Below, one piece after another: positions 39,493 to 58,399 of a DNA stretch of 64,000 nt. Made by a program: the position numbers and the translations under genes. A model generated the notes under the pieces. It worked only from the letters and a program-made list of their open reading frames with translations, had not been told where the DNA came from and did no database searches. The stretch covers positions 186,001 through 250,000 of IMG/VR virus record IMGVR_UViG_3300034073_003340; one strand, written 5' to 3'. Position 1 is the first letter of the stretch. Each line of letters starts with the position of its first letter.

Positions 39493-39717
39493 GGTTAGAG
39501 TGCTGTTTTTCTCTAAATGCTTCCGATCTATCAACAAATCTTACGCTACGGCCAGTTCATGATTAAGAATCCTGTTTGTGTTATCCAACTATCCAATATA
39601 TCAAGCATCTCATTTTAGGATCTGCGCTACGGCCAGTTCATGATTAAAAACCTCTGTTTAACCTTTTTACAAATGCCTACACCCTGGAGACTAGCAGGTT
39701 ACACCAGGGTGTCAACC
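39465..39717 (-). ncRNA. Promoter-to-terminator short transcript with two MNWP minigenes (putative sRNA/minigene unit)
   Basis: TTGACA-N16-TAGTCT promoter; 23-nt direct repeat at 39544 and 39625; no long sense ORF; terminator. Confidence 0.5.
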
Positions 39718-39718
39718 A

Positions 39719-40093
39719 TTATTTGGACGAGATGCTGCCACCGCTTTGCTTGCCTTCGGCAGCGGTGCGGTTGGTGTTGTAGAATGCCAGTTCTTCAGCA
39801 GTGGCATTGCGCAAAGCGATCCAGCCATGCTTGCCGGTTTCCGTGAGGAACTGGATGTTGGTGCCGATGCCAGCTGCGTCAGCAACTTCCGACGGGATGG
39901 TAAAGCGCAAAGCGCGGACAGCCTGCTTCTTCAGGCGCAGGTCAGCGAGCAGCTCACCCTTGGGGAGGCCCACTGCCGACTTGCGATCGGTGGGACGAAC
40001 CTGCAGGGTTCCGTCCAGAACCCGGATACGGACCTTGGTCGCGGTGCCCATGAGAGCCGATGCGTTCTTGTTGAGGTTTACGGTCTTGCCCAT
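39719..40093 (-). CDS. AbrB/MraZ-like paralog 2
   Basis: KVRIR...VRPTDR...LPKGELL...RFTIPSEVADAAGI...KHGWIAL. Confidence 0.8.
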   Translation of the reverse strand: MGKTVNLNKNASALMGTATKVRIRVLDGTLQVRPTDRKSAVGLPKGELLADLRLKKQAVRALRFTIPSEVADAAGIGTNIQFLTETGKHGWIALRNATAEELAFYNTNRTAAEGKQSGGSISSK

Positions 40094-40157
40094 TTTCGAT
40101 CTCCTTGTTTGCTTCCGATAAACCAGTTCTAGCAGAACTGGTGAATATGTCAACCAG
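40094..40157 (-). promoter_or_regulatory. Prototype cassette promoter, leader and RBS
   Basis: ctggTTGACAtattcaccagttctgcTAGAACtggtttatcggaagcaaacaAGGAGatcgaaa-ATG; 44 nt identical at 41044-41087. Confidence 0.85.
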
Positions 40158-40167
40158 AATCTCGCCG

Positions 40168-40527
40168 TTATTTCAACTTCAGGGTGAAATTCCGACTGTG
40201 CTGTTTGGTTTTCTTGACATCCAGCTTATCGACCGGAAGTTCATAGTAGTAAGCCACCCAGTGGGCCGACCGGACGACCTCGCGGGTCACTTCCACCTCA
40301 CCCTTGCGCTTGCCGCGCGTGATGGTGCGCTTGGTGACCTTGGCTTTGCGATTGTGCTTTTCCAGGCTGTAGAGGCGCGCCAGTCCGTCCTTGGTGCCGC
40401 TGCCAATGAGAAAGCGACCGTTATTGCGGAAGCTGTTGAAACTGAAGCCGCCCTCGATCTTGTGGATCACGTCCATCTTGCTCTTGCCCGTGATCTTCAC
40501 CGGCTTGATCTTGATCACAATCGCCAT
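40168..40527 (-). CDS. Highly basic hypothetical early protein
   Basis: Lys/Arg-rich, GC-rich codons; cassette promoter 40583. Confidence 0.8.
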   Translation of the reverse strand: MAIVIKIKPVKITGKSKMDVIHKIEGGFSFNSFRNNGRFLIGSGTKDGLARLYSLEKHNRKAKVTKRTITRGKRKGEVEVTREVVRSAHWVAYYYELPVDKLDVKKTKQHSRNFTLKLK

Positions 40528-40583
40528 TTCCGATCTCCTTGTTTGCTGTCTATGTCCTGGTTTTAACAGAAACTGGTTAGGTG

Positions 40584-41036
40584 TCAACCAGTTTTCTTCT
40601 TTCCGTTGATCACCAGCTGCGCGGGACCCTCATAGCCGAAAAGAAATGCCGGAACCTTGCTGCCGCGCGGCGCATCATACTGGTCACCAAATTCAAAGGT
40701 CTTGTCGCCGACTTTTCCCGTCATCGAATACCAGGTGTTGGCATAATAGTTGAAGCCCACGCCGCTTTCCGCAATGAGCTTTGCGTAAACTTCCGAAAAT
40801 TCACCTTCATAGTGATGAGAGGTGGTGCCGCTGCGAGCCCGATCGGCTTTCAGCGTAACCGGCATGATGGAGCCGGTATAACGACCCTTTGTAATTTCGA
40901 CGAAGATCGGCTTTCCAGCAGCCAGCGTTTCGTTGATGTGATCGAAGATCTCCTTGTAGGCATCCCAAAAGGAACCAAAGGTAGTGTAACGACCATCCAG
41001 CTTGGGAAGTTCCAACCTCTTTACTATCTGTGCCAT
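40584..41036 (-). CDS. Hypothetical early protein (paralogous to N-terminus of 42592)
   Basis: IFVEITKGRYTGSI...FLFGYEGP; stop codon lies in the next -35 box. Confidence 0.75.
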   Translation of the reverse strand: MAQIVKRLELPKLDGRYTTFGSFWDAYKEIFDHINETLAAGKPIFVEITKGRYTGSIMPVTLKADRARSGTTSHHYEGEFSEVYAKLIAESGVGFNYYANTWYSMTGKVGDKTFEFGDQYDAPRGSKVPAFLFGYEGPAQLVINGKKKTG

Positions 41037-41120
41037 TTCCGACCTCCTTGTTTGCTTCCGATAAACCAGTTCTAGCAGAACTGGTGAGATAGTCAACCAC
41101 TATCTCACCAGTTCGCTGGA

Positions 41121-41558
41121 TTAAGCGACCTTTTCCGCGCGAGCAGCCTGAATTACTTCAAAGCGCACAAACTCGTCCTTGGTATCCTCAGGACCCAGTT
41201 CGTCCTTGATATAGCCACCGAACGTGCCGACCAGGCTGTCGACGATTTCCCGACAATCACCCCAGTGGCCCAGCGAGATGTAGGTCATGTCATCGGTGGT
41301 AACGTGTTCATAATCACACTTACAGGAGCCATCGACATGAACCGACATGAGGCGGCGTGTTGCCTTCTTGTTGCGCTCCCAGGGACGCATCGCCAGCAGT
41401 TCAGGAGTATAGTTTTCAGTGAACGAGATCTGGTAGAAGCTGTCGATGCTGGTGAAGAGGATTGCGAAGTTGTCGCCACCATATTTCTTCTTGATCAGCT
41501 TGACGAGATCGATGGGGTTGATGTTGACGCCGATCAGACCAACGTAAGAAACGCTCAT
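41121..41558 (-). CDS. Hypothetical early protein
   Basis: Cassette promoter 41614 and RBS. Confidence 0.8.
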   Translation of the reverse strand: MSVSYVGLIGVNINPIDLVKLIKKKYGGDNFAILFTSIDSFYQISFTENYTPELLAMRPWERNKKATRRLMSVHVDGSCKCDYEHVTTDDMTYISLGHWGDCREIVDSLVGTFGGYIKDELGPEDTKDEFVRFEVIQAARAEKVA

Positions 41559-41624
41559 ATTCGATCTCCTGTGTTGCTTGCTATAAACTGGTGATAGCAT
41601 CTCACCAGTTTATGTCAACCAGTT

Positions 41625-41912
41625 TTAGGAGAATTCACATTCAGGAAGATCTGCGGGGTCCATACCATCTTCAACATCGACCTGTCGACACCAGCGTTCC
41701 CAGCCGGATAGGTTGAAATTGATGGTATAGCCACCCCAGGGTTCTGAACTAATCTTGACCCAGCCCTTGTCCTCGGCATCGAGCCAACCTTTGCCCACAG
41801 GACCCTCGAGAGACTTGATCTCATGCTTGGGAGTGTTGCCCAGCTTACGAATCAATGCCTTTGTGCTGGGCTTGAGCAGGGCAAACTCGGGGGCCTCGAC
41901 GGCCTTAGTCAT
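41625..41912 (-). CDS. Hypothetical protein
   Basis: About 95 aa; start uncertain. Confidence 0.65.
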   Translation of the reverse strand: MTKAVEAPEFALLKPSTKALIRKLGNTPKHEIKSLEGPVGKGWLDAEDKGWVKISSEPWGGYTINFNLSGWERWCRQVDVEDGMDPADLPECEFS

Positions 41913-42075
41913 CGAGGTCGATCCGCTTGTTTTCTGCTCGGCGCTTGCGAGCACTGTTGGCGCGGTAGCTCTTGTCCTTGCGGTAATCGCCCAGATCCAT
42001 ACCGCCCTTTTTCTTGCTGCGGCCCAGCTTCTCGAGAATCTCGATAAACCATGAGGTTCGAATTTTACCTGCCAT
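41905..42075 (-). CDS. Small basic protein
   Basis: AAGGAG SD before MAGKIR. Confidence 0.6.
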   Translation of the reverse strand: MAGKIRTSWFIEILEKLGRSKKKGGMDLGDYRKDKSYRANSARKRRAENKRIDLDD

Positions 42076-42085
42076 TTCTATCTCC

Positions 42086-42274
42086 TTAGCCTCGAGGCAT
42101 TCTTCGATCACCCTGGAGACAGGCAATACGATGACGCAGACTGTTGCGCTCCGTCTCGTCTGTTTCGGTTTCCAGTTCAGCCTGGAGCCGATCAATATTG
42201 GCCTGAATGCGGACCCGATCAGCCTCGGAGGCCGGCTTCTGTGTGTAATAGCACTTCAACTGAATATCGCGCAT
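42086..42274 (-). CDS. Small coiled-coil protein
   Basis: Cassette promoter 42317. Confidence 0.65.
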   Translation of the reverse strand: MRDIQLKCYYTQKPASEADRVRIQANIDRLQAELETETDETERNSLRHRIACLQGDRRMPRG

Positions 42275-42317
42275 TTCAATCTCCTTGTTAAGAACCCTAC
42301 ACTCTGGTGAACAGATG

Positions 42318-42515
42318 TCAACCAGTTTTGGGACGGAGTTTTGCGGACAGCTTGTTAGCTAGCCGAATCAGAGCAATCGAACGATCCTTGGGCGTATCGG
42401 GATCGTCAGCGAGATACCAGATCGCATCGATCTGCTCTTCTGCCGTCCTGGCTTTGATAGCGGCCAGTGGCACAATCGCGAGAGCCGGAATGTTCAGAAT
42501 AAACGGCTTTGCCAT
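42318..42515 (-). CDS. Hypothetical early protein
   Basis: Cassette promoter 42573; ends KTG* in the next -35. Confidence 0.7.
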   Translation of the reverse strand: MAKPFILNIPALAIVPLAAIKARTAEEQIDAIWYLADDPDTPKDRSIALIRLANKLSAKLRPKTG

Positions 42516-42591
42516 CTTTTGATCTCCTCGATTGCCTACCTACTCACCAGTTCTATACTCTGGTGAGTAGGAGTCAACCAGTTTTTGGAGA

Positions 42592-43404
42592 TTAATTGCT
42601 CAGTTTGAAAAGCATCAGTCGATCACCCAGATCCTTGCTATACTTGAGCAGACAGGTTACATTCTCGCCATTTTTGACCTGTCTGCGGACCATCTCTGTA
42701 GAGATGCGACCTGATCCGCCTCCTATGAATGCGGTATAGGCTAGCGATCCCTGTTCGGTAACTTTGATAAGTTTGCCGATCAGCAGTGTATTGGCCCCGC
42801 CATAAAGAAACAGATCGCCCAACTGTATCTCATCACCCAACTGATCGAAAACCTTGTGTTGGGCAGGATCTCGCATTGCTGCCAGTTCTTCTGGTGTTCG
42901 TTCTGTTCGGGAATAGCAATAGACGGTAGGACCCTGATAATCAAACAAAAACTCCAGGCTCATATGCTCGTCATAACTCAATGAAACCGATTTGCGACCA
43001 TCAAATTTTGCCTGGTATCTCGCATTCCAGGCAATGTTGGTAGTGAAGTCATAAGGAATTTGAAAATTCAGCTTCTTGCCTGTTGGCCGATCATTTACAA
43101 GCTTTGCTGTGACAAATTTGTTGATCGGCCAACAGGCAAGATAACCAGGATCCTGCCAGGCTGAAGTATTGGAGATTTTCCACTGGTTGACATCTACTCT
43201 TACGATAGAACCGGCTCGGCATCCGTCGTGAATTTTCGCAAAAATTTCTCCTCGATTTTTGAGGAGTTCAAGCAATTGCTTGAACTCAAGTTCACGATCT
43301 CGGATGAAATCTCGATATTGGCTAATCTCTTTGACTGTTTGATTTTTGCCAACTGATATGCTGGCCAGCATACCCTGAAACAGATCTCGGATCATCAAGC
43401 TCAT
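42592..43404 (-). CDS. Two-domain hypothetical protein
   Basis: IFAKIHDGCRAGSI...FLFDYQGP; VFDQLGDEIQLGD second domain; ends MLFKLSN. Confidence 0.8.
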   Translation of the reverse strand: MSLMIRDLFQGMLASISVGKNQTVKEISQYRDFIRDRELEFKQLLELLKNRGEIFAKIHDGCRAGSIVRVDVNQWKISNTSAWQDPGYLACWPINKFVTAKLVNDRPTGKKLNFQIPYDFTTNIAWNARYQAKFDGRKSVSLSYDEHMSLEFLFDYQGPTVYCYSRTERTPEELAAMRDPAQHKVFDQLGDEIQLGDLFLYGGANTLLIGKLIKVTEQGSLAYTAFIGGGSGRISTEMVRRQVKNGENVTCLLKYSKDLGDRLMLFKLSN

Positions 43405-43467
43405 ATTCGATCTCCACAAAACAGAAGGCCACACCTATAGCAGATGTGGCCTTCCGTCAATTGACTT

Positions 43468-44151
43468 TTAATACCAGCTATCGTCATCCGACTTTTCGCC
43501 ACCCTCATACCAGAGGTTTTCCCGGATATATTCCAGGCATTCCATCAGGGTGCCGCGCTTTTCCAGACCGCTGCTAACAAAACGGGTTTCAAAAACCACA
43601 GCCGAACCGTCGTCGAGGACGCCCAGGTTGTAGCTGCCATGTTCCGACAGGTTGTGCTCGAAAATGTCAAACAGCTTGAGTGTCTGAACGTTGATCTTTT
43701 CCTCCTTGTGGGAAAAGCTGCCGATCATGAAATCACTGGGGGACATCTGCGTGGCGTCCCAGTTGCCGGTCTTCATGTCGGGAAGGACCTCGAGGATCAG
43801 CTTTTCAAGCTGCTCAAGCTTGGCAGTGTCCCAGGTATAGTTGAGAGCCAGCTTGAGGGTCCGCTGACGCGTTCCGCTCCAGTAGCCGCCTCCAAACTGA
43901 AGACCAGTTCCCTTCCACTTGCCCTTCCAGGTCATGTCGGTGAGGAACTCGTATCCTTCCCGAAACTCAACATGGGTGCCGGGCAGGAAAGTTTCCAGCG
44001 CTCGTGCGACAGTCATGGGCTGCTGCGCGGCTTCGGCCTCCAGCATCTTGACCAGTTGATTGTGAAGGCGATTGACCTTGGCCTGCTGCTTCTCGAGCGC
44101 GGCGATTTCGATCTTGAGAATTTCCTCAACCTGTTCGCGGGTCTTGGTCAT
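43468..44151 (-). CDS. Hypothetical early protein
   Basis: 227 aa, cassette promoter 44206. Confidence 0.85.
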   Translation of the reverse strand: MTKTREQVEEILKIEIAALEKQQAKVNRLHNQLVKMLEAEAAQQPMTVARALETFLPGTHVEFREGYEFLTDMTWKGKWKGTGLQFGGGYWSGTRQRTLKLALNYTWDTAKLEQLEKLILEVLPDMKTGNWDATQMSPSDFMIGSFSHKEEKINVQTLKLFDIFEHNLSEHGSYNLGVLDDGSAVVFETRFVSSGLEKRGTLMECLEYIRENLWYEGGEKSDDDSWY

Positions 44152-44217
44152 TTGTAAATCTCCTTTTGTCTGCCTATAACCCGTGATAGCAGAAACTGGT
44201 GAGGAGTCAACCAGTTT

Positions 44218-44589
44218 CTAGATACCAGAGAAGTTTTCAGCCTGCTCGATGTTGACGACCACCTCTTCCAGCCATTGCTCGATGGTCGTTGGTTCGATCT
44301 CATCAAACGACTCACCAAAGGGTCCATAAACCGACGCACCAGCCTTGAGCGACCAAAGAGACTGATCGTCATCTTTGATGAAGAGGTAAATGGTGTGACC
44401 CTCTTCATAGTCCACCCAAGCGGTTTCACCGATCAACGTCCAACCAATTAGAGCCTCTGCTCCATAATCCTCTTCGAGACGCTCAATTGCCTGCTGACGC
44501 CAGAAAGGTGACATAAAGCCACCTACCTGTCTAGCGTCATCCCACTGCTCTCGCAGGATCTGTTCAGCTTCCTGTGGAGTGAACATCAA
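44218..44589 (-). CDS. Hypothetical protein
   Basis: 123 aa, acidic. Confidence 0.75.
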   Translation of the reverse strand: MMFTPQEAEQILREQWDDARQVGGFMSPFWRQQAIERLEEDYGAEALIGWTLIGETAWVDYEEGHTIYLFIKDDDQSLWSLKAGASVYGPFGESFDEIEPTTIEQWLEEVVVNIEQAENFSGI

Positions 44590-44936
44590 GCCACCACCGT
44601 GTCGAGCCAGCGTAGGGTGCGAAAATACTGCTCACACCATTCCTTCTGCGCAACCTTGAGCTCCTCGGTGACCATCACGAGAATCTTGTATTCCTGGAGA
44701 GCTTTGACCCAGGTACGCGGGATACGCTTGCCCCGAGTATAGCGATCCTGGATCTTCCGGATCAAGTCGCGTCCTGCCGTCGCCTGAGCACGAAATTCCT
44801 GGCTGTCTTTGCCGTTGTCGACCACAAGCCGATCGCCTTCGATCTTGTAATGCGGATAAGCGGAGACCATGAAAAAGGGCATACCTGCCTGATTCAGCAT
44901 ATAACCCACATACTGACCTTCAAACTTTTCCATCAT
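44586..44936 (-). CDS. Hypothetical early protein
   Basis: Cassette promoter 44990. Confidence 0.75.
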   Translation of the reverse strand: MMEKFEGQYVGYMLNQAGMPFFMVSAYPHYKIEGDRLVVDNGKDSQEFRAQATAGRDLIRKIQDRYTRGKRIPRTWVKALQEYKILVMVTEELKVAQKEWCEQYFRTLRWLDTVVA

Positions 44937-45002
44937 CTGTCTCCTTTGTTTGCTTCCTACTCACCTGTTCTAGCAAAACAGGTGAGGAAGTCAACCAGAA
45001 TT

Positions 45003-45344
45003 TCAGGAAATTTTCTTGGCCAACCAGGGAGAAATGCGACGGCCAGTCTTGCCAACTGGCAGGATACCACCCCATTCAATTTTGCCAAACGAATCGATGG
45101 TGCGGGGATCGCTACCATACCACATACCACGCAGACCCACTCGGCTTTTCTGTCGACTCACAGTCTGCATGGGGCAGGACTTGTGATCGATTTCACTGAT
45201 AATGACCAGCATACCAGTTCGACCAGTTCGACCAGGCCTAAAAAGGCGTCCAATACGTGCGACGCCATGGATAGCAAGCTTTTGAGCCCTTGCGGCCTGC
45301 TGACGTTCAGCTCGCTTTGCTGACTTTTCCAAATCAATTTTCAT
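45003..45344 (-). CDS. Basic hypothetical protein
   Basis: Cassette promoter 45390. Confidence 0.7.
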   Translation of the reverse strand: MKIDLEKSAKRAERQQAARAQKLAIHGVARIGRLFRPGRTGRTGMLVIISEIDHKSCPMQTVSRQKSRVGLRGMWYGSDPRTIDSFGKIEWGGILPVGKTGRRISPWLAKKIS

Positions 45345-45398
45345 ACGATTCTCCTTTCTATATCTGGTGATAACAGAAATCAGGAGAGTGTCAACCTT

Positions 45399-45863
45399 TT
45401 ACCAAAACCGACGTTTGTCGTAAAAACGAACAGGGTCAGATATTTTGATACTTTCTCGAGTCTCTCCATTTTTGAGCTCTTCAAAGCATTCACAAACATA
45501 GGTAGCTGGTCGTGGATCAGGCAAAATCGGATGCTTTACCTTGGTCATGCCGTTTTGCCGATACTCAGAGCGATGGCTATTGTTATACCGATCTCGCCAA
45601 GTCCCGTCAGGCATCTCATACATAAGAGCAGCACAAAGATATCGACCTCTGGCGTCTGTTCCCACACAATTAAAGCAGGTTTCACATAGCGATCGTCGTA
45701 CAGGCCCTCGATAGACCGGCTGGTACTGATTACAACTAGCGCACCAAAGAAATTCTTCTCTGGGAAAGTGGTTACTCACAGGGCTATTACAGACTTTACA
45801 ACAAGCCTTTGGCGACTCACTTGTGTCGTTTCGCGAGGGCGCAGGAAGGTTACTTGATACCAT
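45399..45863 (-). CDS. Cys-rich (Zn-binding) protein
   Basis: Multiple CxxC pairs. Confidence 0.65.
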   Translation of the reverse strand: MVSSNLPAPSRNDTSESPKACCKVCNSPVSNHFPREEFLWCASCNQYQPVYRGPVRRSLCETCFNCVGTDARGRYLCAALMYEMPDGTWRDRYNNSHRSEYRQNGMTKVKHPILPDPRPATYVCECFEELKNGETRESIKISDPVRFYDKRRFW

Positions 45864-45916
45864 GTTATTAGCCCTCTGCTGTCACCTTCGCCGACGCCTG
45901 AGTCTACCCCCGATCA

Positions 45917-46195: not shown

Positions 46196-46247
46196 GATAA
46201 CTCCTGTTTCTGCCTATACACCAGCTCTAACAGAAACAGGTGATATG

Positions 46248-47694: not shown

Positions 47695-47742
47695 CTGCCT
47701 ATATTCTGGTGATAACATGGATAACCAGAATGTCAATCAGAT

Positions 47743-51647: not shown

Positions 51648-51714
51648 ATAACCTCCTTTTGTTGTTGTTTTTCGAATCTACAATAATTGGTGAATATGTC
51701 AACCAGTTTATTGA

Positions 51715-52110: not shown

Positions 52111-52174
52111 GTTCGATCCCCTTTGTCTGCTTATTCACCAGTTCTAGCAGAACTGGTGAATTCGTCAACCATTT

Positions 52175-52510
52175 TTACCAGAGATGCCGGTCTGAACCGG
52201 CTGATATTGATTTAGCGTTCCATGCCATTCTACGACCTGATTCAGCAATATATTGGGTTTCAAACCCCTCTCCGGGAGAGGTTCCACCGGCCTCTATGTA
52301 ATTAAGGTGAAACGAGCCCAGGCTTTGACAGGCAACCGAGGTATCATATTTGAGAGAATGGTCTCGAACATCAAGTAGACAGGAGGTAGCTGCGGATTCA
52401 AAGGCGCGAGCAGCGTCTTTCAGTTCTATTGAATCTTGAATCGTGATAGCAAAGTAACCACCGGCGATTGAGCATACCAACATTCCTAAAACAATTGTAA
52501 GTTTTCTCAT
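52175..52510 (-). CDS. Membrane-anchored periplasmic protein
   Basis: N-terminal hydrophobic segment; promoter 52568. Confidence 0.7.
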   Translation of the reverse strand: MRKLTIVLGMLVCSIAGGYFAITIQDSIELKDAARAFESAATSCLLDVRDHSLKYDTSVACQSLGSFHLNYIEAGGTSPGEGFETQYIAESGRRMAWNAKSISAGSDRHLW

Positions 52511-52579
52511 TTTTGGTCTCCTGGCGGTATCTGCTTATTCACCAGTTCTAGCAGAAATAGGAGACCTGTCAACCAGCTT

Positions 52580-52801
52580 TTAATCCCGACGACGATCAAT
52601 CACACCGTCAACCATCTTGGTAGCATAATGGACAGGACGCTCGTAGATACCCTGCTCGTCCCTGTAGACGCTGATGAACCTACCCTGGCTAGCCAGAGAC
52701 ACCGTCTCACCATAGCTGATGTTGACGCCCAGGGGCCAATGGGCAACAAGGTCCTCGGCTTCCAAGGCATCGTTAAGTGTAGGAAAGCGGTTGTTCTTCA
52801 T
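52580..52801 (-). CDS. Conserved-type phage hypothetical protein
   Basis: MKNNRFPTLNDALEAE...ISVYRDE.G.YERPVHY. Confidence 0.75.
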   Translation of the reverse strand: MKNNRFPTLNDALEAEDLVAHWPLGVNISYGETVSLASQGRFISVYRDEQGIYERPVHYATKMVDGVIDRRRD

Positions 52802-52802
52802 G

Positions 52803-52973
52803 TCAGTATCCCGTGTTGACGCCAGCGCGAAAGCCCGCCTGATAGGCACGTTCTAGAGCCTCCTTAACGTCCCAGACGCTGAGCTCCTTGAAGTCTAGAC
52901 TGTCGCTGTTGCGTGTCTCGAGAGTCTCCAGATCCAAAACGTCCTGGGCGATTTCATTGAGTTCCTCGTCCAT
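52803..52973 (-). CDS. DUF6900-like small protein (56 aa, not in ORF track)
   Basis: LETLETRNSDSLDF..LSVW.VKEALERAYQAG. Confidence 0.75.
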   Translation of the reverse strand: MDEELNEIAQDVLDLETLETRNSDSLDFKELSVWDVKEALERAYQAGFRAGVNTGY

Positions 52974-53203
52974 TAGTAGGGCACCTTGTCACAATTTGCG
53001 AGGGGAGCGCAAAAGGGTTCTCCGTCGTCGCCGAGACCATAAACGATTCCGTCCACTACGGCTTCGACCACCACCGTCTCGACCAGACCTCGAGCATATT
53101 CCATGAGGATCATGTCGCCCTCGTTGATGTCGGAAGGGTTGACTGCCGGGGCAACAGATCCAAAACCCAGCTTTGCCAAAATACGCTCCACAAAGTTCTT
53201 CAT
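52973..53203 (-). CDS. Hypothetical early protein
   Basis: Cassette promoter 53256. Confidence 0.7.
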   Translation of the reverse strand: MKNFVERILAKLGFGSVAPAVNPSDINEGDMILMEYARGLVETVVVEAVVDGIVYGLGDDGEPFCAPLANCDKVPY

Positions 53204-53266
53204 CTGCTATCTCCTCGTCTGCCTATAAACTGGTGATAGCACCATAGACCAAAGAGTCAACCAGTT

Positions 53267-54382
53267 TTACACCAGTTCGAAAACTTCTCCGGTTTCCAGG
53301 TCTTCACACATGATGATGAACTTGTCGACGATTTCCTCGGCAACCTTGGTCACGGCAGCTTCAACAATTGCGTCCACCTCGTCATCGCTTACAAAAGCGC
53401 CATGGACCCTGCGAACCGTTGAACCATTGCTGACCAGCATATCACCCCAGCCCAGCAGGTTCTGCGCACCGCCCTGACCCAGTGCCGTGCGGCTGTCGAT
53501 CTCGCTGCTGACGCGGAAGCAAATACGCGCAGGGAAGTTGGACTTGATAACACCGGTTACAACGTCCACAGAGGGCCGCTGAGTAGCCATAACAACATGG
53601 ATGCCCGCTGCCCGAGCCTTTTGCGCAAGGCGCTGTACGAGCCCTTCCAGTGTTTTTCCACCAGTCTGCATGAGATCAGCAAACTCGTCAATGAAGACCA
53701 CAATATAGGGCAATTCGTTTCCGGCTTCCTTGTAGGCCTTGATATTGCGAACGCGGGCGTCAGCGAGCAGTCGGTAACGCCGCTCCATTTCCTCAACCAT
53801 ATCCTCGAGGGCACGGATGGATTCACGCGGGTCGGTGATAACCGGCTGGACCAAATGAGGAATGCCATTGTAGATGGACAGTTCCAACATCTTTGGGTCG
53901 ATCATGAGGAACTTACATTCATCAGCTGACAAAGCTGCCATGAGGCTGATGATCATCGCGTTGATACCAACGCTTTTGCCTGAGCCAGTTGTGCCACTGA
54001 CCAATACGTGGGGCATGGTTGCGAGGTCGGTGACGACCACTTCACCCATAACGTCCAGCCCGAGAGCAATGGGCAAAGCCGCAGTGGTGGTCTTGAACTC
54101 CTCGCTGGTCAGAACCTCGTTGAGGAGTATGGTCTTGCGCTGCTCATTGGGAATTTCAACAGCCAGTGTGGGGCTACCAGGCATCACGTTGATCTGGATG
54201 CTCGCAACACCAAGCAGGCGCGCCACGTCCTCGTTGAGCTTCATGATCTGCGAAGCACGAGTTCCAGCGGGAATTTCGATTTCGTAAACGCTGACCAGAG
54301 GTCCTTGCTTGGAACCAATAACACGAACACGATGTCCGAATTCGTCCAGGGCGCGTTCCAGTGCGGTAGCAAAGTTACTCAA
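53267..54382 (-). CDS. ftsK: FtsK/SpoIIIE motor domain only (no TM, no gamma)
   Basis: PHVLVSGTTGSGKS, MIDPKMLELSIY, IDEFADLM, AQKARAAGIH..ATQRPSVDV.TG.IK.N, GAQNLLG.GDML; TTG start. Confidence 0.9.
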   Translation of the reverse strand: MSNFATALERALDEFGHRVRVIGSKQGPLVSVYEIEIPAGTRASQIMKLNEDVARLLGVASIQINVMPGSPTLAVEIPNEQRKTILLNEVLTSEEFKTTTAALPIALGLDVMGEVVVTDLATMPHVLVSGTTGSGKSVGINAMIISLMAALSADECKFLMIDPKMLELSIYNGIPHLVQPVITDPRESIRALEDMVEEMERRYRLLADARVRNIKAYKEAGNELPYIVVFIDEFADLMQTGGKTLEGLVQRLAQKARAAGIHVVMATQRPSVDVVTGVIKSNFPARICFRVSSEIDSRTALGQGGAQNLLGWGDMLVSNGSTVRRVHGAFVSDDEVDAIVEAAVTKVAEEIVDKFIIMCEDLETGEVFELV

Positions 54383-54440
54383 AACCGATCTCCTCTTGAT
54401 GTCTCATCATAGCAGGACAGGTGTGACTGTCAACCAGTTT

Positions 54441-54731
54441 TTAATCGTCCCAATGAGCAACGCCCAAGATCAGACCGCGATAACAGGCAAAACCCTTGAC
54501 TGGCTTGCCACGCAAGATTGCGGTGTATTTGTAAATTTCAGATTTGCGACACTGGAGAGGGGCTTGATTGATGAAAGCCTTGCCGATTGAGATGCTGCGG
54601 TAGCCCTTGTCCTTGAGCGTGTCCTCGACCTTTGATTTTCCATATATGTAATCAACTACGCCGGCCTGTGCCGGGGTTGAAAGAATGCTCATAGCCAGGG
54701 TAAAAGCCAACACCATCTTCCGCATTTTCAA
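54441..54731 (-). CDS. Secreted small protein (Sec signal peptide)
   Basis: MRKMVLAFTLAMSILSTPAQA-; promoter 54772. Confidence 0.7.
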   Translation of the reverse strand: MKMRKMVLAFTLAMSILSTPAQAGVVDYIYGKSKVEDTLKDKGYRSISIGKAFINQAPLQCRKSEIYKYTAILRGKPVKGFACYRGLILGVAHWDD

Positions 54732-54801
54732 CTCCTCTTGTTATCACCACAATAACAATTCTGGTGAACCCGTCAACCAGAATTGTTATAAGGAAGCTTC
54801 C

Positions 54802-55101
54802 TTAGTTCTTAACAAGAATTCGAGCGGCAGCTTTGGAAGTAGCGGAGAGGAAGGTGTAGTCCTCGTGGTTTGCGAGATACTTGAGAGCACCCTCATACGC
54901 CTCTTTGAGCGTTGGGCGCGAGCGACGATCGGTGTCCTCACGGAAATAGCGGCTCATCGCCAACATCATCAACTCTGCGCTTTGGGCTTGCGGATGGTTA
55001 GTGCGAGCAGGCTTATAGCGTCCGCCCTCGGGCGCTATGATATCTTCGGTCACGATCCAGCCGGTCTTCATTCGCGTGTTGTGGGAATAAATGAGCAGCA
55101 T
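54802..55101 (-). CDS. Hypothetical early protein
   Basis: Cassette promoter 55156. Confidence 0.7.
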   Translation of the reverse strand: MLLIYSHNTRMKTGWIVTEDIIAPEGGRYKPARTNHPQAQSAELMMLAMSRYFREDTDRRSRPTLKEAYEGALKYLANHEDYTFLSATSKAAARILVKN

Positions 55102-55164
55102 GACTCGATCTCCTTTGTTGCCTACATCACCGGTTGTATAGAAATCTGGTGATGTGTCAACCAG

Positions 55165-55488
55165 TCAATGAGAAATATACTCAGTCTCTGGATCACCTTC
55201 AATGCGACGTCGACCTGTCTTGGGATGGCGATGCCAATGCTTTGGTTCGCCCTCGAAGCCCCGCTGTCGCCACTCTTCTAGGGCATGTTCCACTAGCAGC
55301 ATATTGCCAACCATACGGTCGTCATAGCACCAGCGGTCGTCATAACCCCAGAAGTTGTCCATGGAACCAGTGATCATTGTCCAGTGAAACATGAGGCGAT
55401 AGAAGGCGACATATTCGTCGCCTCCCCGAATAAGCTCAACGTGCTTATAATCGCGCTTCAACTGCGCTAGATATTCTTCGCGGGTCAT
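55165..55488 (-). CDS. Hypothetical phage protein
   Basis: GYDDRWCY...GEP..WHRHPKTGRRR. Confidence 0.75.
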   Translation of the reverse strand: MTREEYLAQLKRDYKHVELIRGGDEYVAFYRLMFHWTMITGSMDNFWGYDDRWCYDDRMVGNMLLVEHALEEWRQRGFEGEPKHWHRHPKTGRRRIEGDPETEYISH

Positions 55489-55526
55489 GCTCGCTTGTCT
55501 ATACCCTAAACAAGCGAGCGTCTACC

Positions 55527-56099
55527 TCAACCCTTGTGTTCCTTGATATAACGCTGGGCAGTCGACAGCCCAACGCCAGTGATCTTCGCAATACGCGGAA
55601 TCGAGAATGACCCCTGGCGATAGAGGTCAATTACGTTCTGCCGCTTTTCACGCGAACGAATCTGGGCCGCGCTCAGGGTCTTTTTGGCGGGACTGACTAC
55701 TGCCTTTGACGCCGAGGACACGGTGCTCAGGCTATTGATATCTGCCTGTGTTACTGCTCCAGTATCGAGAAGATGCTTGATGAGTTTGGCGCCAACTGAC
55801 AGGCCGGCTGTTGGTGCGATCTTGACAAGCTTCGCAGCCTTGGTGCTCTTTTTGGTCTTACTGGACTTTCCATTGGGATTGAATGGCAGACCAGCAGGAG
55901 TTTTGCCTTTGGCCCGGGCATCTTCCCAGATCTTTTTGAAGTTGGTCTGACGTCCACGCTTTGGCACATTGTATTTTTCGAGGATATCATACAACAGCTT
56001 TGAATACAGACCAGGAAAATCAGCGTAGATCTGTTTCAGGGTATCGCCCCTCTTGTATGCTTCTACGATATTCAGTTCGTCTTGCTCGGACAGGGTCAT
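55527..56099 (-). CDS. Multi-HTH protein with Lys/Ala-rich linker
   Basis: N- and C-terminal HTH (SIPRIAKITGVGLSTAQRYI). Confidence 0.75.
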   Translation of the reverse strand: MTLSEQDELNIVEAYKRGDTLKQIYADFPGLYSKLLYDILEKYNVPKRGRQTNFKKIWEDARAKGKTPAGLPFNPNGKSSKTKKSTKAAKLVKIAPTAGLSVGAKLIKHLLDTGAVTQADINSLSTVSSASKAVVSPAKKTLSAAQIRSREKRQNVIDLYRQGSFSIPRIAKITGVGLSTAQRYIKEHKG

Positions 56100-56160
56100 A
56101 AGATGCTCCGTTAGGCGCCAGCAGCGCAACAAAGTGGGATTAAAAATCCCAATGCGCCTT

Positions 56161-56649
56161 TTACGACCCAGGATACTCGGCTGTCAACAGATTTATGGAA
56201 CCAACGGCCTTGATGAGCTTCTCAAGGATCTCATCCGTTTTGGGATGGGGCTTGCCCTGTTTGTCATTATAAATTTTGTTGTCGCCTATTGGGTGAAGCT
56301 TTCGAAAAGCGTTGCTCAGCCGTTGGCCCTGCTCGTCGTCTTCAATAAAAGCGAGAACCTTTACAGGTCCCCAGCGGTTTTCCTTGAGATAACGAATATC
56401 ATCCCTGAACTCATAACCCTCAGGGGCCGGTTCAAATGCGCTCGCACAATATCGATCACGCGAGTAGATAGTATCGTCGAATACCGCCTTTTGGCGACGG
56501 GTGGGCGCTCGGGCCTCGCGGGTAATCTTGCCCCACCAGTTCCTTGTCTCACCACGTTCTGCAATATCGAGGATCCAGACGTTGATGCCTTCGTTAACGG
56601 GCTCGCAATATGCGACACCTCTGAAATCCTTGAATACTGCCCAGCGCAC
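56161..56649 (-). CDS. Hypothetical protein
   Basis: 162 aa. Confidence 0.7.
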   Translation of the reverse strand: MRWAVFKDFRGVAYCEPVNEGINVWILDIAERGETRNWWGKITREARAPTRRQKAVFDDTIYSRDRYCASAFEPAPEGYEFRDDIRYLKENRWGPVKVLAFIEDDEQGQRLSNAFRKLHPIGDNKIYNDKQGKPHPKTDEILEKLIKAVGSINLLTAEYPGS

Positions 56650-56650
56650 T

Positions 56651-56812
56651 TTAGTTCTCGATCCGGTGGTTGACCACGTTGTTGAACAGGGCCTTCTTTG
56701 CCGAGATTACACCCGCGCGCTTGATGGAATCCATTGCCGTCTCCGAGTCGATCTCGAACTCGTGATCCTTACGGTGACGGCCGTTCTTGGTAGTGATGAT
56801 CAGCTTTGCCAC
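56651..56812 (-). CDS. Small hypothetical protein
   Basis: GTG start after GGGAG; 53 aa. Confidence 0.55.
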   Translation of the reverse strand: MAKLIITTKNGRHRKDHEFEIDSETAMDSIKRAGVISAKKALFNNVVNHRIEN

Positions 56813-56864
56813 TACTCGTCTCCCATTAGGGGAGGGGAGGAGACTAACCCCTCCCCCGCCACCA

Positions 56865-57185
56865 TTACTTCGAGATCGAAGCTGCCTTTTCTGCGGCGTC
56901 GGCCGCGACGGCCAGGTTGAACCAGCCATACTTGGCGGGGACCAGCTTGACCGCGGTGCCGGCTTCGGGCAGGTGCTCGGCGATTTCGCTGGGCAGACCC
57001 AGGCGACGACCGGCGCCCTTGACACCGAGGTCGCGGAGAAGTTCGGTCTTGGGCATGTTCACGGTCGAGGTGCGGTCGGTGAAGCGGACCTGGACCTGTT
57101 CGTCACGAACGCGAACGCGGGCCTTGGTTGCGGCGCCGATCACATTGGCACTCACGCTGGCAATGAAATTCACAGTCTTATACAC
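56865..57185 (-). CDS. AbrB/MraZ-like paralog 3
   Basis: KARVR...VRFTDR...MPKTELL...RLGLPSEIAEHL...KYGWFNL; promoter 57260; GC hairpin at about 56829-56857. Confidence 0.8.
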   Translation of the reverse strand: MYKTVNFIASVSANVIGAATKARVRVRDEQVQVRFTDRTSTVNMPKTELLRDLGVKGAGRRLGLPSEIAEHLPEAGTAVKLVPAKYGWFNLAVAADAAEKAASISK

Positions 57186-57296
57186 GTTTCGATCTCCTTG
57201 TTATTTCAGGGGCACCATTGCCCCGTCCATGCTCTGGGTTTATACTCTGGTTTTATGATGTCAACCAGAAAAATACTCTGATTTAAATTTTTGAAC

Positions 57297-57322
57297 ATGG
57301 GGGAGGCGAACCTCCCCCATGA
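57297..57322. terminator. Hairpin terminator
   Basis: catgggggagg-cgaa-cctcccccatg. Confidence 0.7.
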
Positions 57323-57670
57323 TCAGATATATTCTCCAAAAATCTCACGATCGTTACGACGATCAGGGATCATCATCTTTGATAGAGCGTGGATATACCC
57401 AAACCTTGCTGCTTCACGCCAGGCATCCATGGGGTTGATATCCACATCAAAACGCTTTGCTACCGCGTTTTGATCCTCTTCGTCGTTGTCATCAAGACCA
57501 ATGCCATTATAGACAACGAACTCCTCGGGAGATTCTGGATTGGGGACCGCACTAACAGTGACCAGAACTTCGTCACCGCAGTGGATCTGTAGAAAATAAT
57601 CTTCATCAAACGTATGGGCTTCAACGGCATAAAACTGCCGTGCCCTTTCGTTCGCATCAATATCTGACAT
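57323..57670 (-). CDS. Acidic hypothetical protein
   Basis: AGGAG SD; variant promoter 57726. Confidence 0.75.
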   Translation of the reverse strand: MSDIDANERARQFYAVEAHTFDEDYFLQIHCGDEVLVTVSAVPNPESPEEFVVYNGIGLDDNDEEDQNAVAKRFDVDINPMDAWREAARFGYIHALSKMMIPDRRNDREIFGEYI

Positions 57671-57755
57671 CGGGGTCTCCTGGTTGTCGCTATGACACCA
57701 GCACTAAATGTCTGCTACCCTCAACGTCAATAAGTTTAGATGAAATCTTCTGCTG

Positions 57756-57974
57756 TTAGGCTGTAAACTTTTGAGCGATCATTTGCTCAATCGTTGAAAT
57801 TTTGGCCTCGAGTATATCCAGCATGGGTTGACCGTATTTTTCCATACGGTCAGGTGGATAGTTCTCAATCATTCGCAGATAATTGATGCGCTCGGTCTGT
57901 AGACCTTGAAGCAAGAGGCGGCTCATCTTTTCGTTGAGCCGCTCTCTTCCCTCCCATGCTTTATGGAGATTCAT
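57756..57974 (-). CDS. Hypothetical protein
   Basis: TAATG-coupled. Confidence 0.7.
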   Translation of the reverse strand: MNLHKAWEGRERLNEKMSRLLLQGLQTERINYLRMIENYPPDRMEKYGQPMLDILEAKISTIEQMIAQKFTA

Positions 57975-58324
57975 TAACGCAACTCAGGGTCCGCGTCACG
58001 AGCAGCGGCCTCGGCCCAGTCAATGTAATAGTCGAAGACGCGTTCGACCAGATGCGCCGCTGCTTCCGTCGGAGTCTGCTTGACTTCGCCAAAGCCCAGG
58101 ATCGACATCACGAATTCCTCGGTCAGCGTGATCTTCATCTGCTTCCATTCTTCAGCAGACTGACCAAAGGTCGGGAAGATCATCTGGGCGTTTTCGTTGG
58201 CGCCCTGTGCTGCCGTCATGACGAGATAGCTGGCGATCGACCCCAGGCCACGAAATTCGTTGCCCGAGCAAAGAGCAGAAATCACATAATCAGCAGCATA
58301 GATCTTGGTTTCTTCAAGCTTCAT
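57974..58324 (-). CDS. Hypothetical early protein
   Basis: Cassette promoter 58381. Confidence 0.75.
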   Translation of the reverse strand: MKLEETKIYAADYVISALCSGNEFRGLGSIASYLVMTAAQGANENAQMIFPTFGQSAEEWKQMKITLTEEFVMSILGFGEVKQTPTEAAAHLVERVFDYYIDWAEAAARDADPELR

Positions 58325-58399
58325 TTTCGATCTCCTTGTTTGTGTGCCTATGCTCTGGTGATAGCACCACACCAGAGTTTGTCAACCAGTTTTAGGAGA

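What the first reader, a model, noticed from the sequence alone, without database searches (positions are those of the whole stretch)
39679..58380. Covarying hairpins place the -10 element in or next to a loop: structure conserved, sequence not
Seen: stems flank the -10 with different sequences. ACCAGTTCT/AGAACTGGT (13 bp at 52133-52161); CCTACTCACCAG (42539-42571); the compensatory variant CACCTGTT/AACAGGTG (44960-44986, 51263-51296); an inverted-orientation stem (41583-41613); and unrelated stems GAAGGCCACA (43424-43454), ACACCCTGG (39679-39712) and ACCAATTCTGCTAC (50908-50938). At 41078-41114 and 29248-29280 an alternative stem covers the -35 instead. Only the right arm would be in the promoter's own transcript. 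Inference: the hairpin acts in DNA (cruciform or ssDNA on injection that pre-melts or gates the -10, a supercoiling switch, an N4-like hairpin promoter or an attC-like recombination substrate), or in read-through RNA from the upstream cassette (processing or termination).
Basis: partly seen in the sequence, partly recalled or inferred. Interest (0 to 1): 0.8.

Follow-up and report, generated by a model that had tools for sequence, protein, structure and literature searches.

The report
Promoter-with-hairpin gene cassettes in megaphage
The hairpins are real and their arms co-vary. They are the promoter-plus-stem-loop cassettes (PeSLs) already described in T4-like phages, found here in a 436-kb T4-like megaphage, and the half of the hairpin that lies inside the promoter is probably present only in RNA reading through from the upstream gene.

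Summary
Observation confirmed.

They sit in about 34 near-identical intergenic cassettes on the minus strand of the window, and at least 60 genome-wide. Each cassette runs: A-rich tract with the upstream stop codon, CTGG, TTGACA, 13 nt, TGnTA(nnnC/T), conserved leader, GGAGATCGAA, ATG.

Arm-swap tests show that the promoter spacer pairs with its own downstream sequence better than with that of other cassettes. This holds in the genome (z -7 to -9) and in four related 417-480 kb phages (z -2.8 to -6.2).

The feature is not uniform:
- Only 85 of 196 cassettes have a stem of at least 8 pairs.
- Loop size and register vary.
- 49 of those 85 stems pair the spacer with the Shine-Dalgarno region rather than with the -10 flank.

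The phage encodes a T4-type capsid protein. Genuine PeSLs of phage phi1 show the same -10-in-loop geometry and the same swap signal. Related genomes differ by cassette-bounded indels and order swaps.

Verdict: a new member of a known kind (PeSL). The stems most likely act in read-through RNA, by attenuation or by masking the ribosome site. A DNA-level role is not excluded. N4-like, attC-like and single-operator readings are not supported.

The parts
29200..63820 (-). Array of about 34 single-gene cassettes, all on the minus strand. Each has an A-rich tract with the upstream stop codon, CTGG, a -35 TTGACA, a 13-nt spacer, TGnTA(nnnC), a conserved leader (aATAGGCAGAcAAA), the SD GGAGATCGAA and ATG. 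The genes are mostly ORFans of 57-371 aa.
   Evidence: consensus and coordinates of each cassette; Pfam: mostly no family
52133..52161 (-). Class A hairpin. Left arm in the spacer, loop TGCTA holding -12T/-11A, right arm made of the 3' part of the -10 plus the discriminator. 13 bp.
   Evidence: -17.4 kcal/mol, z -7.9
42539..42571 (-). Class A hairpin, 12 bp, 9-nt loop holding the -10.
   Evidence: z -7.1; no other cassette's arm pairs as well
44960..44986 (-). Class A hairpin with the CACCTGTT/AACAGGTG arm variant.
   Evidence: z -6.1
51263..51296 (-). Class A hairpin, 14 bp, same arm variant. The left arm starts inside the -35 hexamer.
   Evidence: z -8.7
41583..41613 (-). Class A hairpin with arms in swapped orientation (AAACTGGTGA / TCACCAGTTT), 12 bp, 7-nt loop.
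   Evidence: z -6.4
43424..43454 (-). GC-rich hairpin over the -10 of cassette 43402-43460, followed by TGTTTTG. It is the only cassette stem that resembles an intrinsic terminator.
   Evidence: -29 kcal/mol duplex
39679..39712 (-). Class A hairpin with unrelated arms (ACACCCTGG / CCAGGGTGT), 16-nt loop.
   Evidence: z -3.5
50908..50938 (-). 14-bp hairpin. Its left arm includes TGCTAC (extended -10 plus the first bases of the -10); loop AAA.
41078..41114 (-). 16-bp hairpin with the -35 in its loop. Its right arm is also the left arm of the -10 hairpin at 41065-41085, so the two are mutually exclusive.
29248..29280 (-). 14-bp hairpin whose right arm contains the -35 hexamer.
   Evidence: z -8.5
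44191..44219 (-). 10-bp hairpin between the upstream AGAAACTGGT and the spacer ACCAGTTTCT, with the -35 in the loop.
54752..54789 (-). 14-bp hairpin between upstream sequence and the spacer, with the -35 in the loop.
49399..49448 (-). Class B pairing. The spacer (49432-49448) is complementary to the leader plus SD (49399-49415), 15 of 17 positions.
46203..46240 (-). Class B pairing: spacer CCTGTTTCTG with leader/SD CAGAAACAGG.
52515..52566 (-). Class B pairing: spacer GGTCTCCT with SD AGGAGACC.
40100..41044 (.). 943-bp segment (two gene cassettes) between two cassettes that share 44 identical bases. A contig from a sister sample skips it.
   Evidence: run X4: joint 40100->41044, 44 letters fit both sides; depth 0 in two bins inside the segment, 40182-40375 and 40764-40957; the two cassette sequences

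Best explanation
These are PeSL-type composite cassettes ('promoter-early stem-loop'), in a 436-kb T4-like megaphage.

Each small early gene carries its own host-type promoter: -35 TTGACA, a 16-nt spacer ending in TGn, and a -10 TAnnn(C/T). The upstream gene ends 14 nt or less before the -35, or inside it, in 22 of the 28 window cassettes where its stop could be placed, so the cassette is essentially the whole intergenic space.

The 13 free bases of the spacer are the only unconstrained sequence upstream of the transcription start. They are complementary to another part of the same cassette: the bases just after the -10, the leader and Shine-Dalgarno region, or the bases just before the -35.

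The inferred start lies about 12 nt after the TA of the -10. A transcript from the cassette's own promoter therefore lacks the 5' arm. Only RNA reading through from upstream cassettes can fold.

Most likely function: the hairpin acts on that read-through RNA. It would attenuate or pause transcription, and in the Shine-Dalgarno class it would mask the ribosome site. Each gene would then be expressed mainly from its own promoter whatever lies upstream. The repeated cassettes also serve as crossover points that delete, insert and reorder single genes.

Shown here: the anatomy, the covariation, the kinship with PeSLs, and the cassette-bounded rearrangements. Inferred: the transcription start, the existence of read-through, and that the RNA form rather than the DNA form is the active one.
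For: Anatomy and copy number.

Covariation. The spacer pairs with its own downstream sequence better than with that of other cassettes in five genomes: G000 z -7.1 (44 cassettes) and -9.1 (60 cassettes), G001 -6.2, G003 -5.3, G004 -5.4, G002 -2.8 and -3.5. The signal is stronger when the right segment runs to the ATG than when only 20 nt are taken, except in one of the two G002 stretches.

Arm sequences are lineage-specific, and hairpin type differs even upstream of orthologous genes.

49 of 85 strong stems overlap the SD. Predicted probability that the SD is unpaired:
- 0.63 in own-promoter transcripts;
- 0.32 in read-through transcripts;
- 0.42 with the upstream part shuffled (p 1e-6).

Loops reach about 35 nt. 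That is compatible with RNA folding and hard to reconcile with cruciforms.

Published PeSLs have the same parts and the same variable stem positions ('between the -35 and -10, or overlapping either box'). One stem-loop lowered downstream lacZ as much as the rrnB T1 terminator (PMC2839356). Stem sequences are lineage-specific there too (PMC4122927).

Genuine PeSLs of phage phi1 analysed here show the same -10-in-loop geometry and a positive swap test (z -3.4).

The phage encodes a T4-type Gp23 capsid protein.

Cassette-bounded indel and order swaps between G001 and G003, and a 943-bp cassette deletion variant in a sister sample.

Precedent for a promoter sitting inside the 5' arm of an SD-masking hairpin: T4 genes e, soc, 49 and I-TevI (PMC3014915).
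Against: No transcript data exist. The two 'RNA' runs look like DNA and barely cover the region.

The stems are not canonical intrinsic terminators. There is no U-tract except at 43424-43454, and terminator-like sites are not enriched (24 vs 18.7 +/- 4.8).

There is no G-U over A-C excess among stem mismatches (42 vs 39 overall; 4 vs 5 for internal mismatches). Long-term selection on a sense-strand RNA helix should produce such an excess. Sense RNA is only marginally more stable than antisense (-13.9 vs -13.3, p 0.026).

More than half of the cassettes have no convincing stem.

Most of the predicted SD masking is generic. Any upstream sequence of this composition lowers accessibility, and shuffling the spacer alone changes it only from 0.32 to 0.36.

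The upstream stop codon is so close to the 5' arm that a terminating ribosome would cover it. The stem might therefore couple translation rather than insulate it.
Confidence: 0.6

Rival explanations
1. DNA-level structure. The long perfect palindromes extrude as cruciforms in negatively supercoiled DNA and switch the embedded promoter with superhelical density. They would either occlude it or present -12T/-11A unpaired in the loop.
For: About a dozen stems in this genome are perfect, 12-16 bp long, with loops of 3-7 nt centred on the -10 or the -35. Mismatches show no RNA-type wobble bias, and many stems have no mismatch at all. Promoter control by cruciform extrusion in a synthetic palindromic promoter is known from the literature; this is from my own knowledge and was not checked here.
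Against: More than half of the strong stems have their right arm in the leader or SD with loops of 15-35 nt. These are poor cruciform formers, yet they carry the strongest covariation signal ('toATG'). The symmetry axis shifts relative to the -10, and many cassettes have no stem, so no precise geometry is maintained. It is also unclear whether DNA of a T4-like phage is held under the required torsional stress early in infection.
Confidence: 0.13
2. Protein operator. The repeated ACCAG/CTGGT motif lies before the -35, in the spacer and after the -10. It would be bound by a phage or host regulator that shuts the early promoters off or turns them on. The 'hairpin' would be only the inverted arrangement of half-sites.
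For: CTGG precedes TTGACA in most cassettes, and CTGGT follows the -10 whether or not it is paired. Several cassettes carry ACCAG twice in direct orientation and have no stem (40587, 50445, 61156). Each related genome keeps its own spacer motif even in cassettes without a complementary partner.
Against: Many stems lack the motif altogether: GAAGGCCACA, ACACCCTGG, TATAGGACTGG, ACCAATTCTGCTAC, GTGCGATTTCTCT and all the anti-SD stems. Arm sequence, orientation, spacing and register all vary, which a single dimeric binder would not tolerate. The swap test shows cassette-specific complementarity beyond any shared motif.
Confidence: 0.08
3. Recombination element or mutational by-product. The inverted repeats are made and kept perfect by template switching at quasi-palindromes, or they are favoured because structure-prone repeats stimulate the crossovers that shuffle cassettes. 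They would have no direct role in gene expression.
For: Stems are often perfect, and hairpin type or presence differs even upstream of orthologous genes. Mismatches show no wobble bias. Cassettes are demonstrable breakpoints of indels and order swaps. [quoted passage not shown]
Against: Homologous recombination needs only the roughly 60-100 bp of shared cassette sequence, not a hairpin. Cassette-specific arms reduce that shared homology rather than increase it. The 5' arm consistently sits upstream of the inferred start and the 3' arm downstream of it, and SD-complementary spacers are frequent; both point to an expression-related constraint. The PeSL stem-loop had a measured effect on downstream expression (PMC2839356).
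Confidence: 0.17

Closest known systems
PeSLs (promoter-early stem-loops) of T4-like phages RB49/phi1, PST/T4 and nt-1/KVP40 (Arbiol et al. 2010, PMC2839356; Comeau et al. 2014, PMC4122927)
   Same: - Intergenic cassette made of an upstream stop codon in an A-rich tract, a sigma-70-type -35 and -10, a stem-loop, an SD and a start codon.
- Dozens of copies upstream of small ORFans on one strand.
- Stem position varies: inside the spacer, over the -10, over the -35, upstream or downstream.
- Stem sequence is lineage-specific.
- Cassettes mark indels, replacements and gene displacements between relatives.
- The host phage has a T4-type capsid gene.
- In phi1 I found the same -10-in-loop stems and a positive arm-swap test.
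   Different: - The genome is 2.5 times larger and comes from an uncultured environmental clade (417-480 kb).
- The promoter relies on an extended -10 (TGn), with C rather than T at the last -10 position in two of the five genomes.
- Stems are mixed-sequence rather than G-run/C-run.
- A large subclass pairs the spacer with the Shine-Dalgarno region. I did not see this in the 43 phi1 promoter cassettes examined from two 50-kb stretches of that genome, and the PeSL papers do not describe it.
- Terminator activity and mini-circles are untested here.
Translational masking of read-through transcripts in T4 genes e, soc, 49 and I-TevI (reviewed in PMC3014915)
   Same: The promoter lies within the DNA that encodes the 5' strand of a helix sequestering the SD or AUG. 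Long transcripts are therefore masked, and transcripts from the local promoter are open. The class B cassettes here have this geometry (49 of 196).
   Different: In T4 the internal promoter is a late promoter and the masked RNAs are early or middle transcripts, so the device gives temporal control. Here the upstream and local promoters are of the same class, so any effect would be insulation or coupling, not timing. Nothing has been measured here.
N4 virion-RNA-polymerase hairpin promoters, and integron attC sites
   Same: Function depends on an intrastrand DNA hairpin whose structure is conserved more than its sequence.
   Different: N4 promoters have a short stem of fixed length with a 3-nt loop at a fixed distance from the start, and they are read by a dedicated phage polymerase (from my own knowledge). 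attC sites are imperfect repeats with conserved extrahelical bases; they flank promoterless cassettes next to an integrase (from my own knowledge). Here the promoter is sigma-70 type, the geometry is not fixed, the stems are perfect, and every cassette has its own promoter.

Membership tests
PeSL cassette | Sigma-70-type early promoter (-35 and -10 at proper spacing) | tested here: met
   TTGACA, 13 nt, TGnTA(nnn). 34 cassettes in the window and at least 60 in the genome; relatives have TAnnnT.
PeSL cassette | A/T-rich tract upstream of the -35 holding the stop codon of the upstream gene | tested here: met
   Consensus aAaaCTGG before TTGACA. The stop codon was placed in 28 of the 34 cassettes; it lies from 4 nt inside the -35 to 14 nt upstream in 22 of them and 24-40 nt upstream in 3.
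PeSL cassette | Stem-loop within or overlapping the promoter, at variable positions | tested here: met
   Stems lie over the -10, over the -35, and between spacer and leader. The same geometry is seen in phi1. The stem is present in under half of the cassettes.
PeSL cassette | Shine-Dalgarno sequence and start codon at the 3' end | tested here: met
   GGAGATCGAA then ATG in nearly all cassettes.
PeSL cassette | Many copies clustered in a region of small, mostly orphan genes | tested here: met
   Of 98 minus-strand regex matches, 67 lie in the 20-kb bins spanning genome 220-340 kb, against 24 on the plus strand genome-wide. 6 of 10 proteins tested have no Pfam family.
PeSL cassette | Host genome is a T4-like phage | tested here: met
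   Gp23 major capsid family PF07068, E 2e-81, above the cut-off.
PeSL cassette | Cassettes bound indels, replacements and displacements between related genomes | tested here: met
   In G001 vs G003, an extra promoter-plus-ORF unit is flanked by cassette copies, with homology resuming at the -35, and there are three swaps of adjacent genes. A contig from a sister sample has a 943-bp deletion with 44 shared bases at the joint (caveat: de Bruijn contig).
PeSL cassette | Stem-loop attenuates or terminates upstream transcription | not testable with these tools
   No RNA data. The stems lack U-tracts, and terminator-like sites are not enriched.
PeSL cassette | Excised cassette mini-circles | not testable with these tools
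   'Goes back' joints have sides of only 32 letters in repeated sequence and cannot be interpreted.
T4 gene e-type masked translation start | SD or AUG paired in the long transcript, with the 5' strand upstream of the local promoter's start | tested here: inconclusive
   Predicted for 49 of 196 cassettes. Mean SD accessibility is 0.63 (own transcript) vs 0.32 (read-through), but 0.42 with shuffled upstream sequence. The transcription start is inferred, not mapped.
T4 gene e-type masked translation start | Local and upstream promoters belong to different temporal classes | tested here: not met
   Upstream and local promoters share one consensus.
Intrinsic terminator | GC-rich stem followed by a U-run | tested here: not met
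   None of the cassette stems is called by the scan. Only 43424-43454 has a T-rich tail. Canonical terminators are common elsewhere in the genome.
N4-type hairpin promoter | Hairpin of fixed stem and loop size at a fixed distance from the start | tested here: not met
   Stems 8-16 bp, loops 3-35 nt; three different pairing registers, worked out by hand from the cassette sequences. I did not search for a virion RNA polymerase.
Integron attC site | Imperfect inverted repeat with conserved extrahelical bases, flanking promoterless cassettes | tested here: not met
   Stems are perfect with no conserved bulges, and every cassette carries its own promoter and SD. I did not search for an integrase.

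The most novel reading that the evidence does not exclude
The promoter spacer works as a programmable 'anti-leader'. By pairing with its own leader or Shine-Dalgarno region only in read-through RNA, it makes dozens of tandem, co-oriented, terminator-less gene cassettes context-independent, or couples them to upstream translation. Under that reading this is what allows single genes to be shuffled freely in T4-like phages. It would be a general design principle of PeSL arrays that has not been described.
Probability: 0.25. Interest if true: 0.6.

Novelty: new member of a known kind. Interest (0 to 1): 0.4.

Why it matters
It extends the PeSL cassette architecture, so far described only in cultured T4-like phages of 165-250 kb, to an environmental clade of 417-480 kb T4-like megaphages.

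It adds the first quantitative evidence that the stems are kept by compensatory change rather than by a shared palindromic consensus. The arm-swap test is positive in every genome and genome segment tested: the five megaphages, one of them in two separately tested stretches, plus phi1.

The spacer-to-Shine-Dalgarno subclass links two ideas that had been separate: PeSL 'terminators' and the T4 gene e-type masking of read-through transcripts. If confirmed, it would explain how long arrays of same-strand promoters without terminators avoid position-dependent over-expression.

For annotation, the cassette consensus is a reliable marker of early-gene boundaries in these giant phage genomes.

Tried and rejected
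- **Transcript evidence.** The two runs labelled RNA are probably DNA and give only 4-5 short pieces, so no starts or ends could be mapped.
- **Wobble asymmetry, to tell RNA from DNA.** G-U 42 vs A-C 39 overall, 4 vs 5 for well-flanked internal mismatches. Sense vs antisense folding energy differs only marginally. Inconclusive.
- **Conservation of a given hairpin upstream of orthologous genes.** Hairpin class and sequence, and even its presence, differ between orthologous cassettes. Column-wise covariation statistics of the R-scape kind do not suit this element, so I used arm-swap permutation instead.
- **Close relatives, for fine mapping of crossovers.** No blastn match in the phage collection and no close protein match in viral contigs.
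- **Association of genome-specific genes with promoter-bearing ORFs in G001 vs G003.** No enrichment with my crude ORF calls: 43% vs 51% unique.
- **Known RNA families and tRNAs in the window.** None.
- **RegB-type SD-cleaving nuclease.** Not found, and the control search was uninformative.
- **First attempt with contiguous Watson-Crick stems only**. It underestimated the stems and allowed 2-nt loops, so I replaced it with energy-based tests.
- **Canonical terminator reading.** Rejected.

Full report
**What is there**

The window is bases 186,001-250,000 of a 435,856-bp virus record with direct terminal repeats. From about 29 kb to its right end, all genes lie on the minus strand. They are short, and only about 60-90 nt separates most of them.

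Read on the minus strand, each gap is one copy of a repeated cassette:
- an A-rich tract that holds the upstream stop codon;
- CTGG, then TTGACA;
- 13 variable bases;
- TGn, then TA plus four bases (mostly GAAC, TCAC or AAAC);
- a conserved leader (aATAGGCAGAcAAA);
- GGAGATCGAA, then ATG.

Supporting counts:
- The nonamer covering the -35 occurs 53 times in the window, against 15 +/- 3.5 expected.
- CTGGTTGACW occurs 38 times on the minus strand and 3 times on the plus strand of the genome.
- A looser pattern gives 98 minus-strand sites, 67 of them in the 20-kb bins spanning genome 220-340 kb.

This is a sigma-70-type promoter with a consensus -35 and an extended -10. In two of the five related genomes the last -10 position is mostly C (30 of 44 and 28 of 33 cassettes). 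In one relative it is mostly T (28 of 31), and in the other two T is the commonest base, at about half.

I could place the upstream stop codon in 28 of the 34 window cassettes. In 22 of them it lies from 4 nt inside the -35 hexamer to 14 nt upstream of it; in 3 it lies 24-40 nt upstream. In six cassettes it is the TGA inside the hexamer itself. So there is no room for a separate terminator.

**Check of the observation**

They are perfect helices of 9-16 bp, with folding energies 3.5 to 9.4 sd below shuffles.

In eight of them the 5' arm lies in the spacer and the 3' arm begins in the second half of the -10, so the TGnTA sits in the loop. In the other two (41078-41114 and 29248-29280) the -35 is in the loop or in the 3' arm.

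Genome-wide there are 129 perfect inverted repeats with a stem of at least 10 bp, against 11 in a block-shuffled genome. About 18 lie in cassettes, which occupy 2% of the sequence. Most of the rest look by eye like classical A-run/GC-stem/T-run terminators, outside the array.

**Is it covariation or a shared palindrome?**

I paired the spacer of each cassette with its own downstream sequence, and then with the downstream sequence of every other cassette.

| Test | Cassettes | Self (kcal/mol) | Swapped (kcal/mol) | Result |
|---|---|---|---|---|
| Folding | 59 | -8.88 | -6.87 +/- 0.33 | 0 of 5000 permutations as low |
| Duplex energy up to the start codon | 60 | -12.22 | -9.24 +/- 0.33 | z -9.1 |

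Cassettes that share arms cross-pair with each other, so the test is conservative.

A pattern scan of viral contigs found four related records of 417-480 kb with the same promoter type, 42-57 copies each. I fetched their promoter-rich stretches. Each genome has its own preferred spacer words:
- G004: TTCCTATTC and TTCCTGAAT;
- G001 and G003: TCACCTATTC and TCTCCTGTTC;
- G002: CTGGTG before the TA.

The swap test is positive in every one: z -6.2, -5.3, -5.4, -2.8 and -3.5. A weaker signal links the spacer to the 24 nt upstream of the -35. It is significant in two genomes only.

**The feature is heterogeneous**

- Of 196 cassettes in the five genomes, 85 have an ungapped stem with at least 8 Watson-Crick pairs.
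- In the other 49 the 3' arm overlaps the Shine-Dalgarno sequence, so the spacer is an anti-SD. Examples: GATCTCCTGTT with AACAGGAGATC, TCTCCTATTCTGT with ACTGAATAGGAGA, ATCTCCGTGTGCT with AACACACGGAGAT.
- In the window, cassettes 49395-49453, 46193-46251 and 52508-52572 are of this second kind.
- With TTGACA numbered 1-6, the paired positions sum to 42, 43 or 44 in three cassettes that I worked out by hand from the sequences, so the symmetry axis moves. Loops range from 3 to about 35 nt.
- Upstream of orthologous genes, the stem class, its sequence and even its presence differ between genomes.

So what is maintained is 'some pairing between the spacer and the rest of the cassette', not a defined structure.

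That the -10 or the -35 lies in a loop follows simply from the hexamers being fixed. Arms can only use the free positions beside them.

**What it is**

The architecture matches the PeSLs ('promoter-early stem-loops') of T4-like phages. [quoted passage not shown] They are repeated in the hyperplastic regions upstream of ORFans. One stem-loop reduced downstream lacZ as strongly as rrnB T1, and the cassettes mediate indels and mini-circles (PMC2839356). Stem sequences are lineage-specific (PMC4122927).

I tested three membership points directly.

1. The megaphage encodes a T4-type major capsid protein (PF07068, E 2e-81).
2. I took the genuine PeSL genome phi1 (EF437941) and ran the same pipeline. 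Many of its 43 promoters have the 5' arm at the end of the spacer and the 3' arm right after the -10. Examples are GGGAGTAG-TAAGAT-ACTCCC, GGGGGTAT-TAATAT-ACCCCC and GCGGTTAATC-TATAAT-AACCGC. The swap test is positive (z -3.4).
3. Related genomes differ at cassette boundaries.
   - Between two adjacent orthologues, G001 has an extra promoter-plus-ORF unit flanked by cassette copies, and homology resumes at the -35.
   - Three pairs of adjacent genes are in swapped order.
   - A contig from a sister sample joins 40100 to 41044 across 44 bases shared by two cassettes. That sample has no depth in two bins inside the skipped two-gene segment, 40182-40375 and 40764-40957. Being a de Bruijn contig, it is supportive rather than conclusive.

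**How it most likely works**

A sigma-70 start should lie about 7 nt after the -10 hexamer. A cassette's own transcript would then begin near the conserved aATAGG and lack the 5' arm. This is inferred, not mapped.

With no terminators between genes, polymerases from upstream cassettes must read across, and only their RNA can form the stems.

For the SD class this is the geometry of T4 genes e, soc, 49 and I-TevI. There the promoter lies in the DNA encoding the 5' strand of an SD-masking helix (PMC3014915).

Predicted probability that the SD is unpaired:

| RNA modelled | P(SD unpaired) |
|---|---|
| Own-promoter transcript | 0.63 |
| Read-through transcript | 0.32 |
| Read-through, upstream part shuffled | 0.42 |
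| Read-through, upstream part taken from another cassette | 0.36 |
| Read-through, spacer alone shuffled | 0.36 |

The specific masking effect is therefore real but modest on average, and concentrated in a subset of cassettes.

For the -10-flanking class the published PeSL result suggests attenuation. However, the stems here lack U-tracts, and terminator-like sites are not enriched (24 vs 18.7 +/- 4.8).

A caveat on direction: the upstream stop codon is so close that a terminating ribosome would cover the 5' arm. The stems could therefore couple downstream translation to upstream translation rather than insulate it.

**RNA or DNA?**

The long-loop stems and the stronger signal 'to the ATG' favour RNA.

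Against RNA, stem mismatches show no G-U excess over A-C (42 vs 39 overall; 4 vs 5 when well flanked), many stems are flawless, and sense RNA is only slightly more stable than antisense (p 0.026).

A cruciform role for the dozen long short-loop palindromes, and a mutational or recombinational origin, therefore stay open.

A single-operator reading is weak. The ACCAG/CTGGT word is indeed over-represented, including in direct orientation where no stem forms. But many stems lack it, and its orientation, spacing and sequence all vary.

N4-like and attC-like readings fail on geometry, promoter type and cassette content.

**Verdict**

The element is a PeSL-type cassette, so it is a new member of a known kind. 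It sits in a previously unexamined clade of very large T4-like phages.

The one feature I could not find in the PeSL papers, or in the phi1 cassettes I examined, is the anti-SD spacer subclass.

The mechanism remains inferred for lack of transcript data.

Noticed in passing
window 39544-39569 and 39625-39650 (with 39465-39492): Two copies of a 26-nt direct repeat, 81 nt apart, lie in a roughly 280-nt non-coding stretch downstream of the cassette at 39715. On the minus strand each holds a 4-codon mini-ORF (ATG AAC TGG CCG TAG). A canonical 13-bp terminator hairpin follows. This could be a leader-peptide or small-RNA locus.
   Followed up: partly
window, six cassettes (e.g. -35 at 50440-50445, 49448-49453, 46246-46251, 42316-42321, 41613-41618, 40582-40587): The stop codon of the upstream gene is the TGA inside the -35 hexamer TTGACA, so the coding sequence and the next promoter overlap.
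   Followed up: partly
whole genome G000 and relatives G001-G004: A clade of 417-480 kb phages, three with direct terminal repeats. G000 carries a T4-type Gp23 capsid gene (genome 40187-41155). This is far larger than cultured T4-like phages. Source samples are subsurface, soil, wastewater and freshwater metagenomes.
   Followed up: partly
window cassettes; loci L127-L152: The last -10 position is C in most cassettes of G000 and G002 (TAGAAC, TATCAC, TAACTC) but T in G004 (TAGATT, TAAATT). All keep TGn upstream. In G000 and G002 the -10 is followed by a conserved TGGT whether or not it is paired.
   Followed up: partly
window cassettes and L127-L152: The bases between the SD and the start codon (GGAGATCGAAa ATG) are conserved across all five genomes, well beyond what ribosome binding needs. 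No RegB-like nuclease was found in G000.
   Followed up: partly
window 53267-54382, 27662-28930, 61183-62922 (all minus strand): Among the ORFans of the early array are an FtsK/SpoIIIE-family ATPase, a class I Glu/Gln tRNA-synthetase-like protein and a cytidylyltransferase-domain protein.
   Followed up: no
L141-L146 (G001) vs L135-L140 (G003): Adjacent single-gene cassettes appear in swapped order in three places between two otherwise collinear genomes. By my ORF numbering these are 110/111 vs 123/122, 113/114 vs 126/125 and 155/156 vs 166/165.
   Followed up: yes
window 39988-40181, 44062-44255 and others (runs X3, X4): Contig depth spikes 10-60 fold exactly at promoter cassettes, and several 'goes back' or 'skips' joints have sides of 20-32 letters. 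This is most likely repeat collapse in short-read assembly. It cannot be read as mini-circles.
   Followed up: no
genome G000 outside the array (e.g. 283163-283188, 295163-295190, 87774-87798): Canonical bidirectional terminators (A-run, GC stem, T-run) are frequent elsewhere in the genome but nearly absent from the early cassette array.
   Followed up: no
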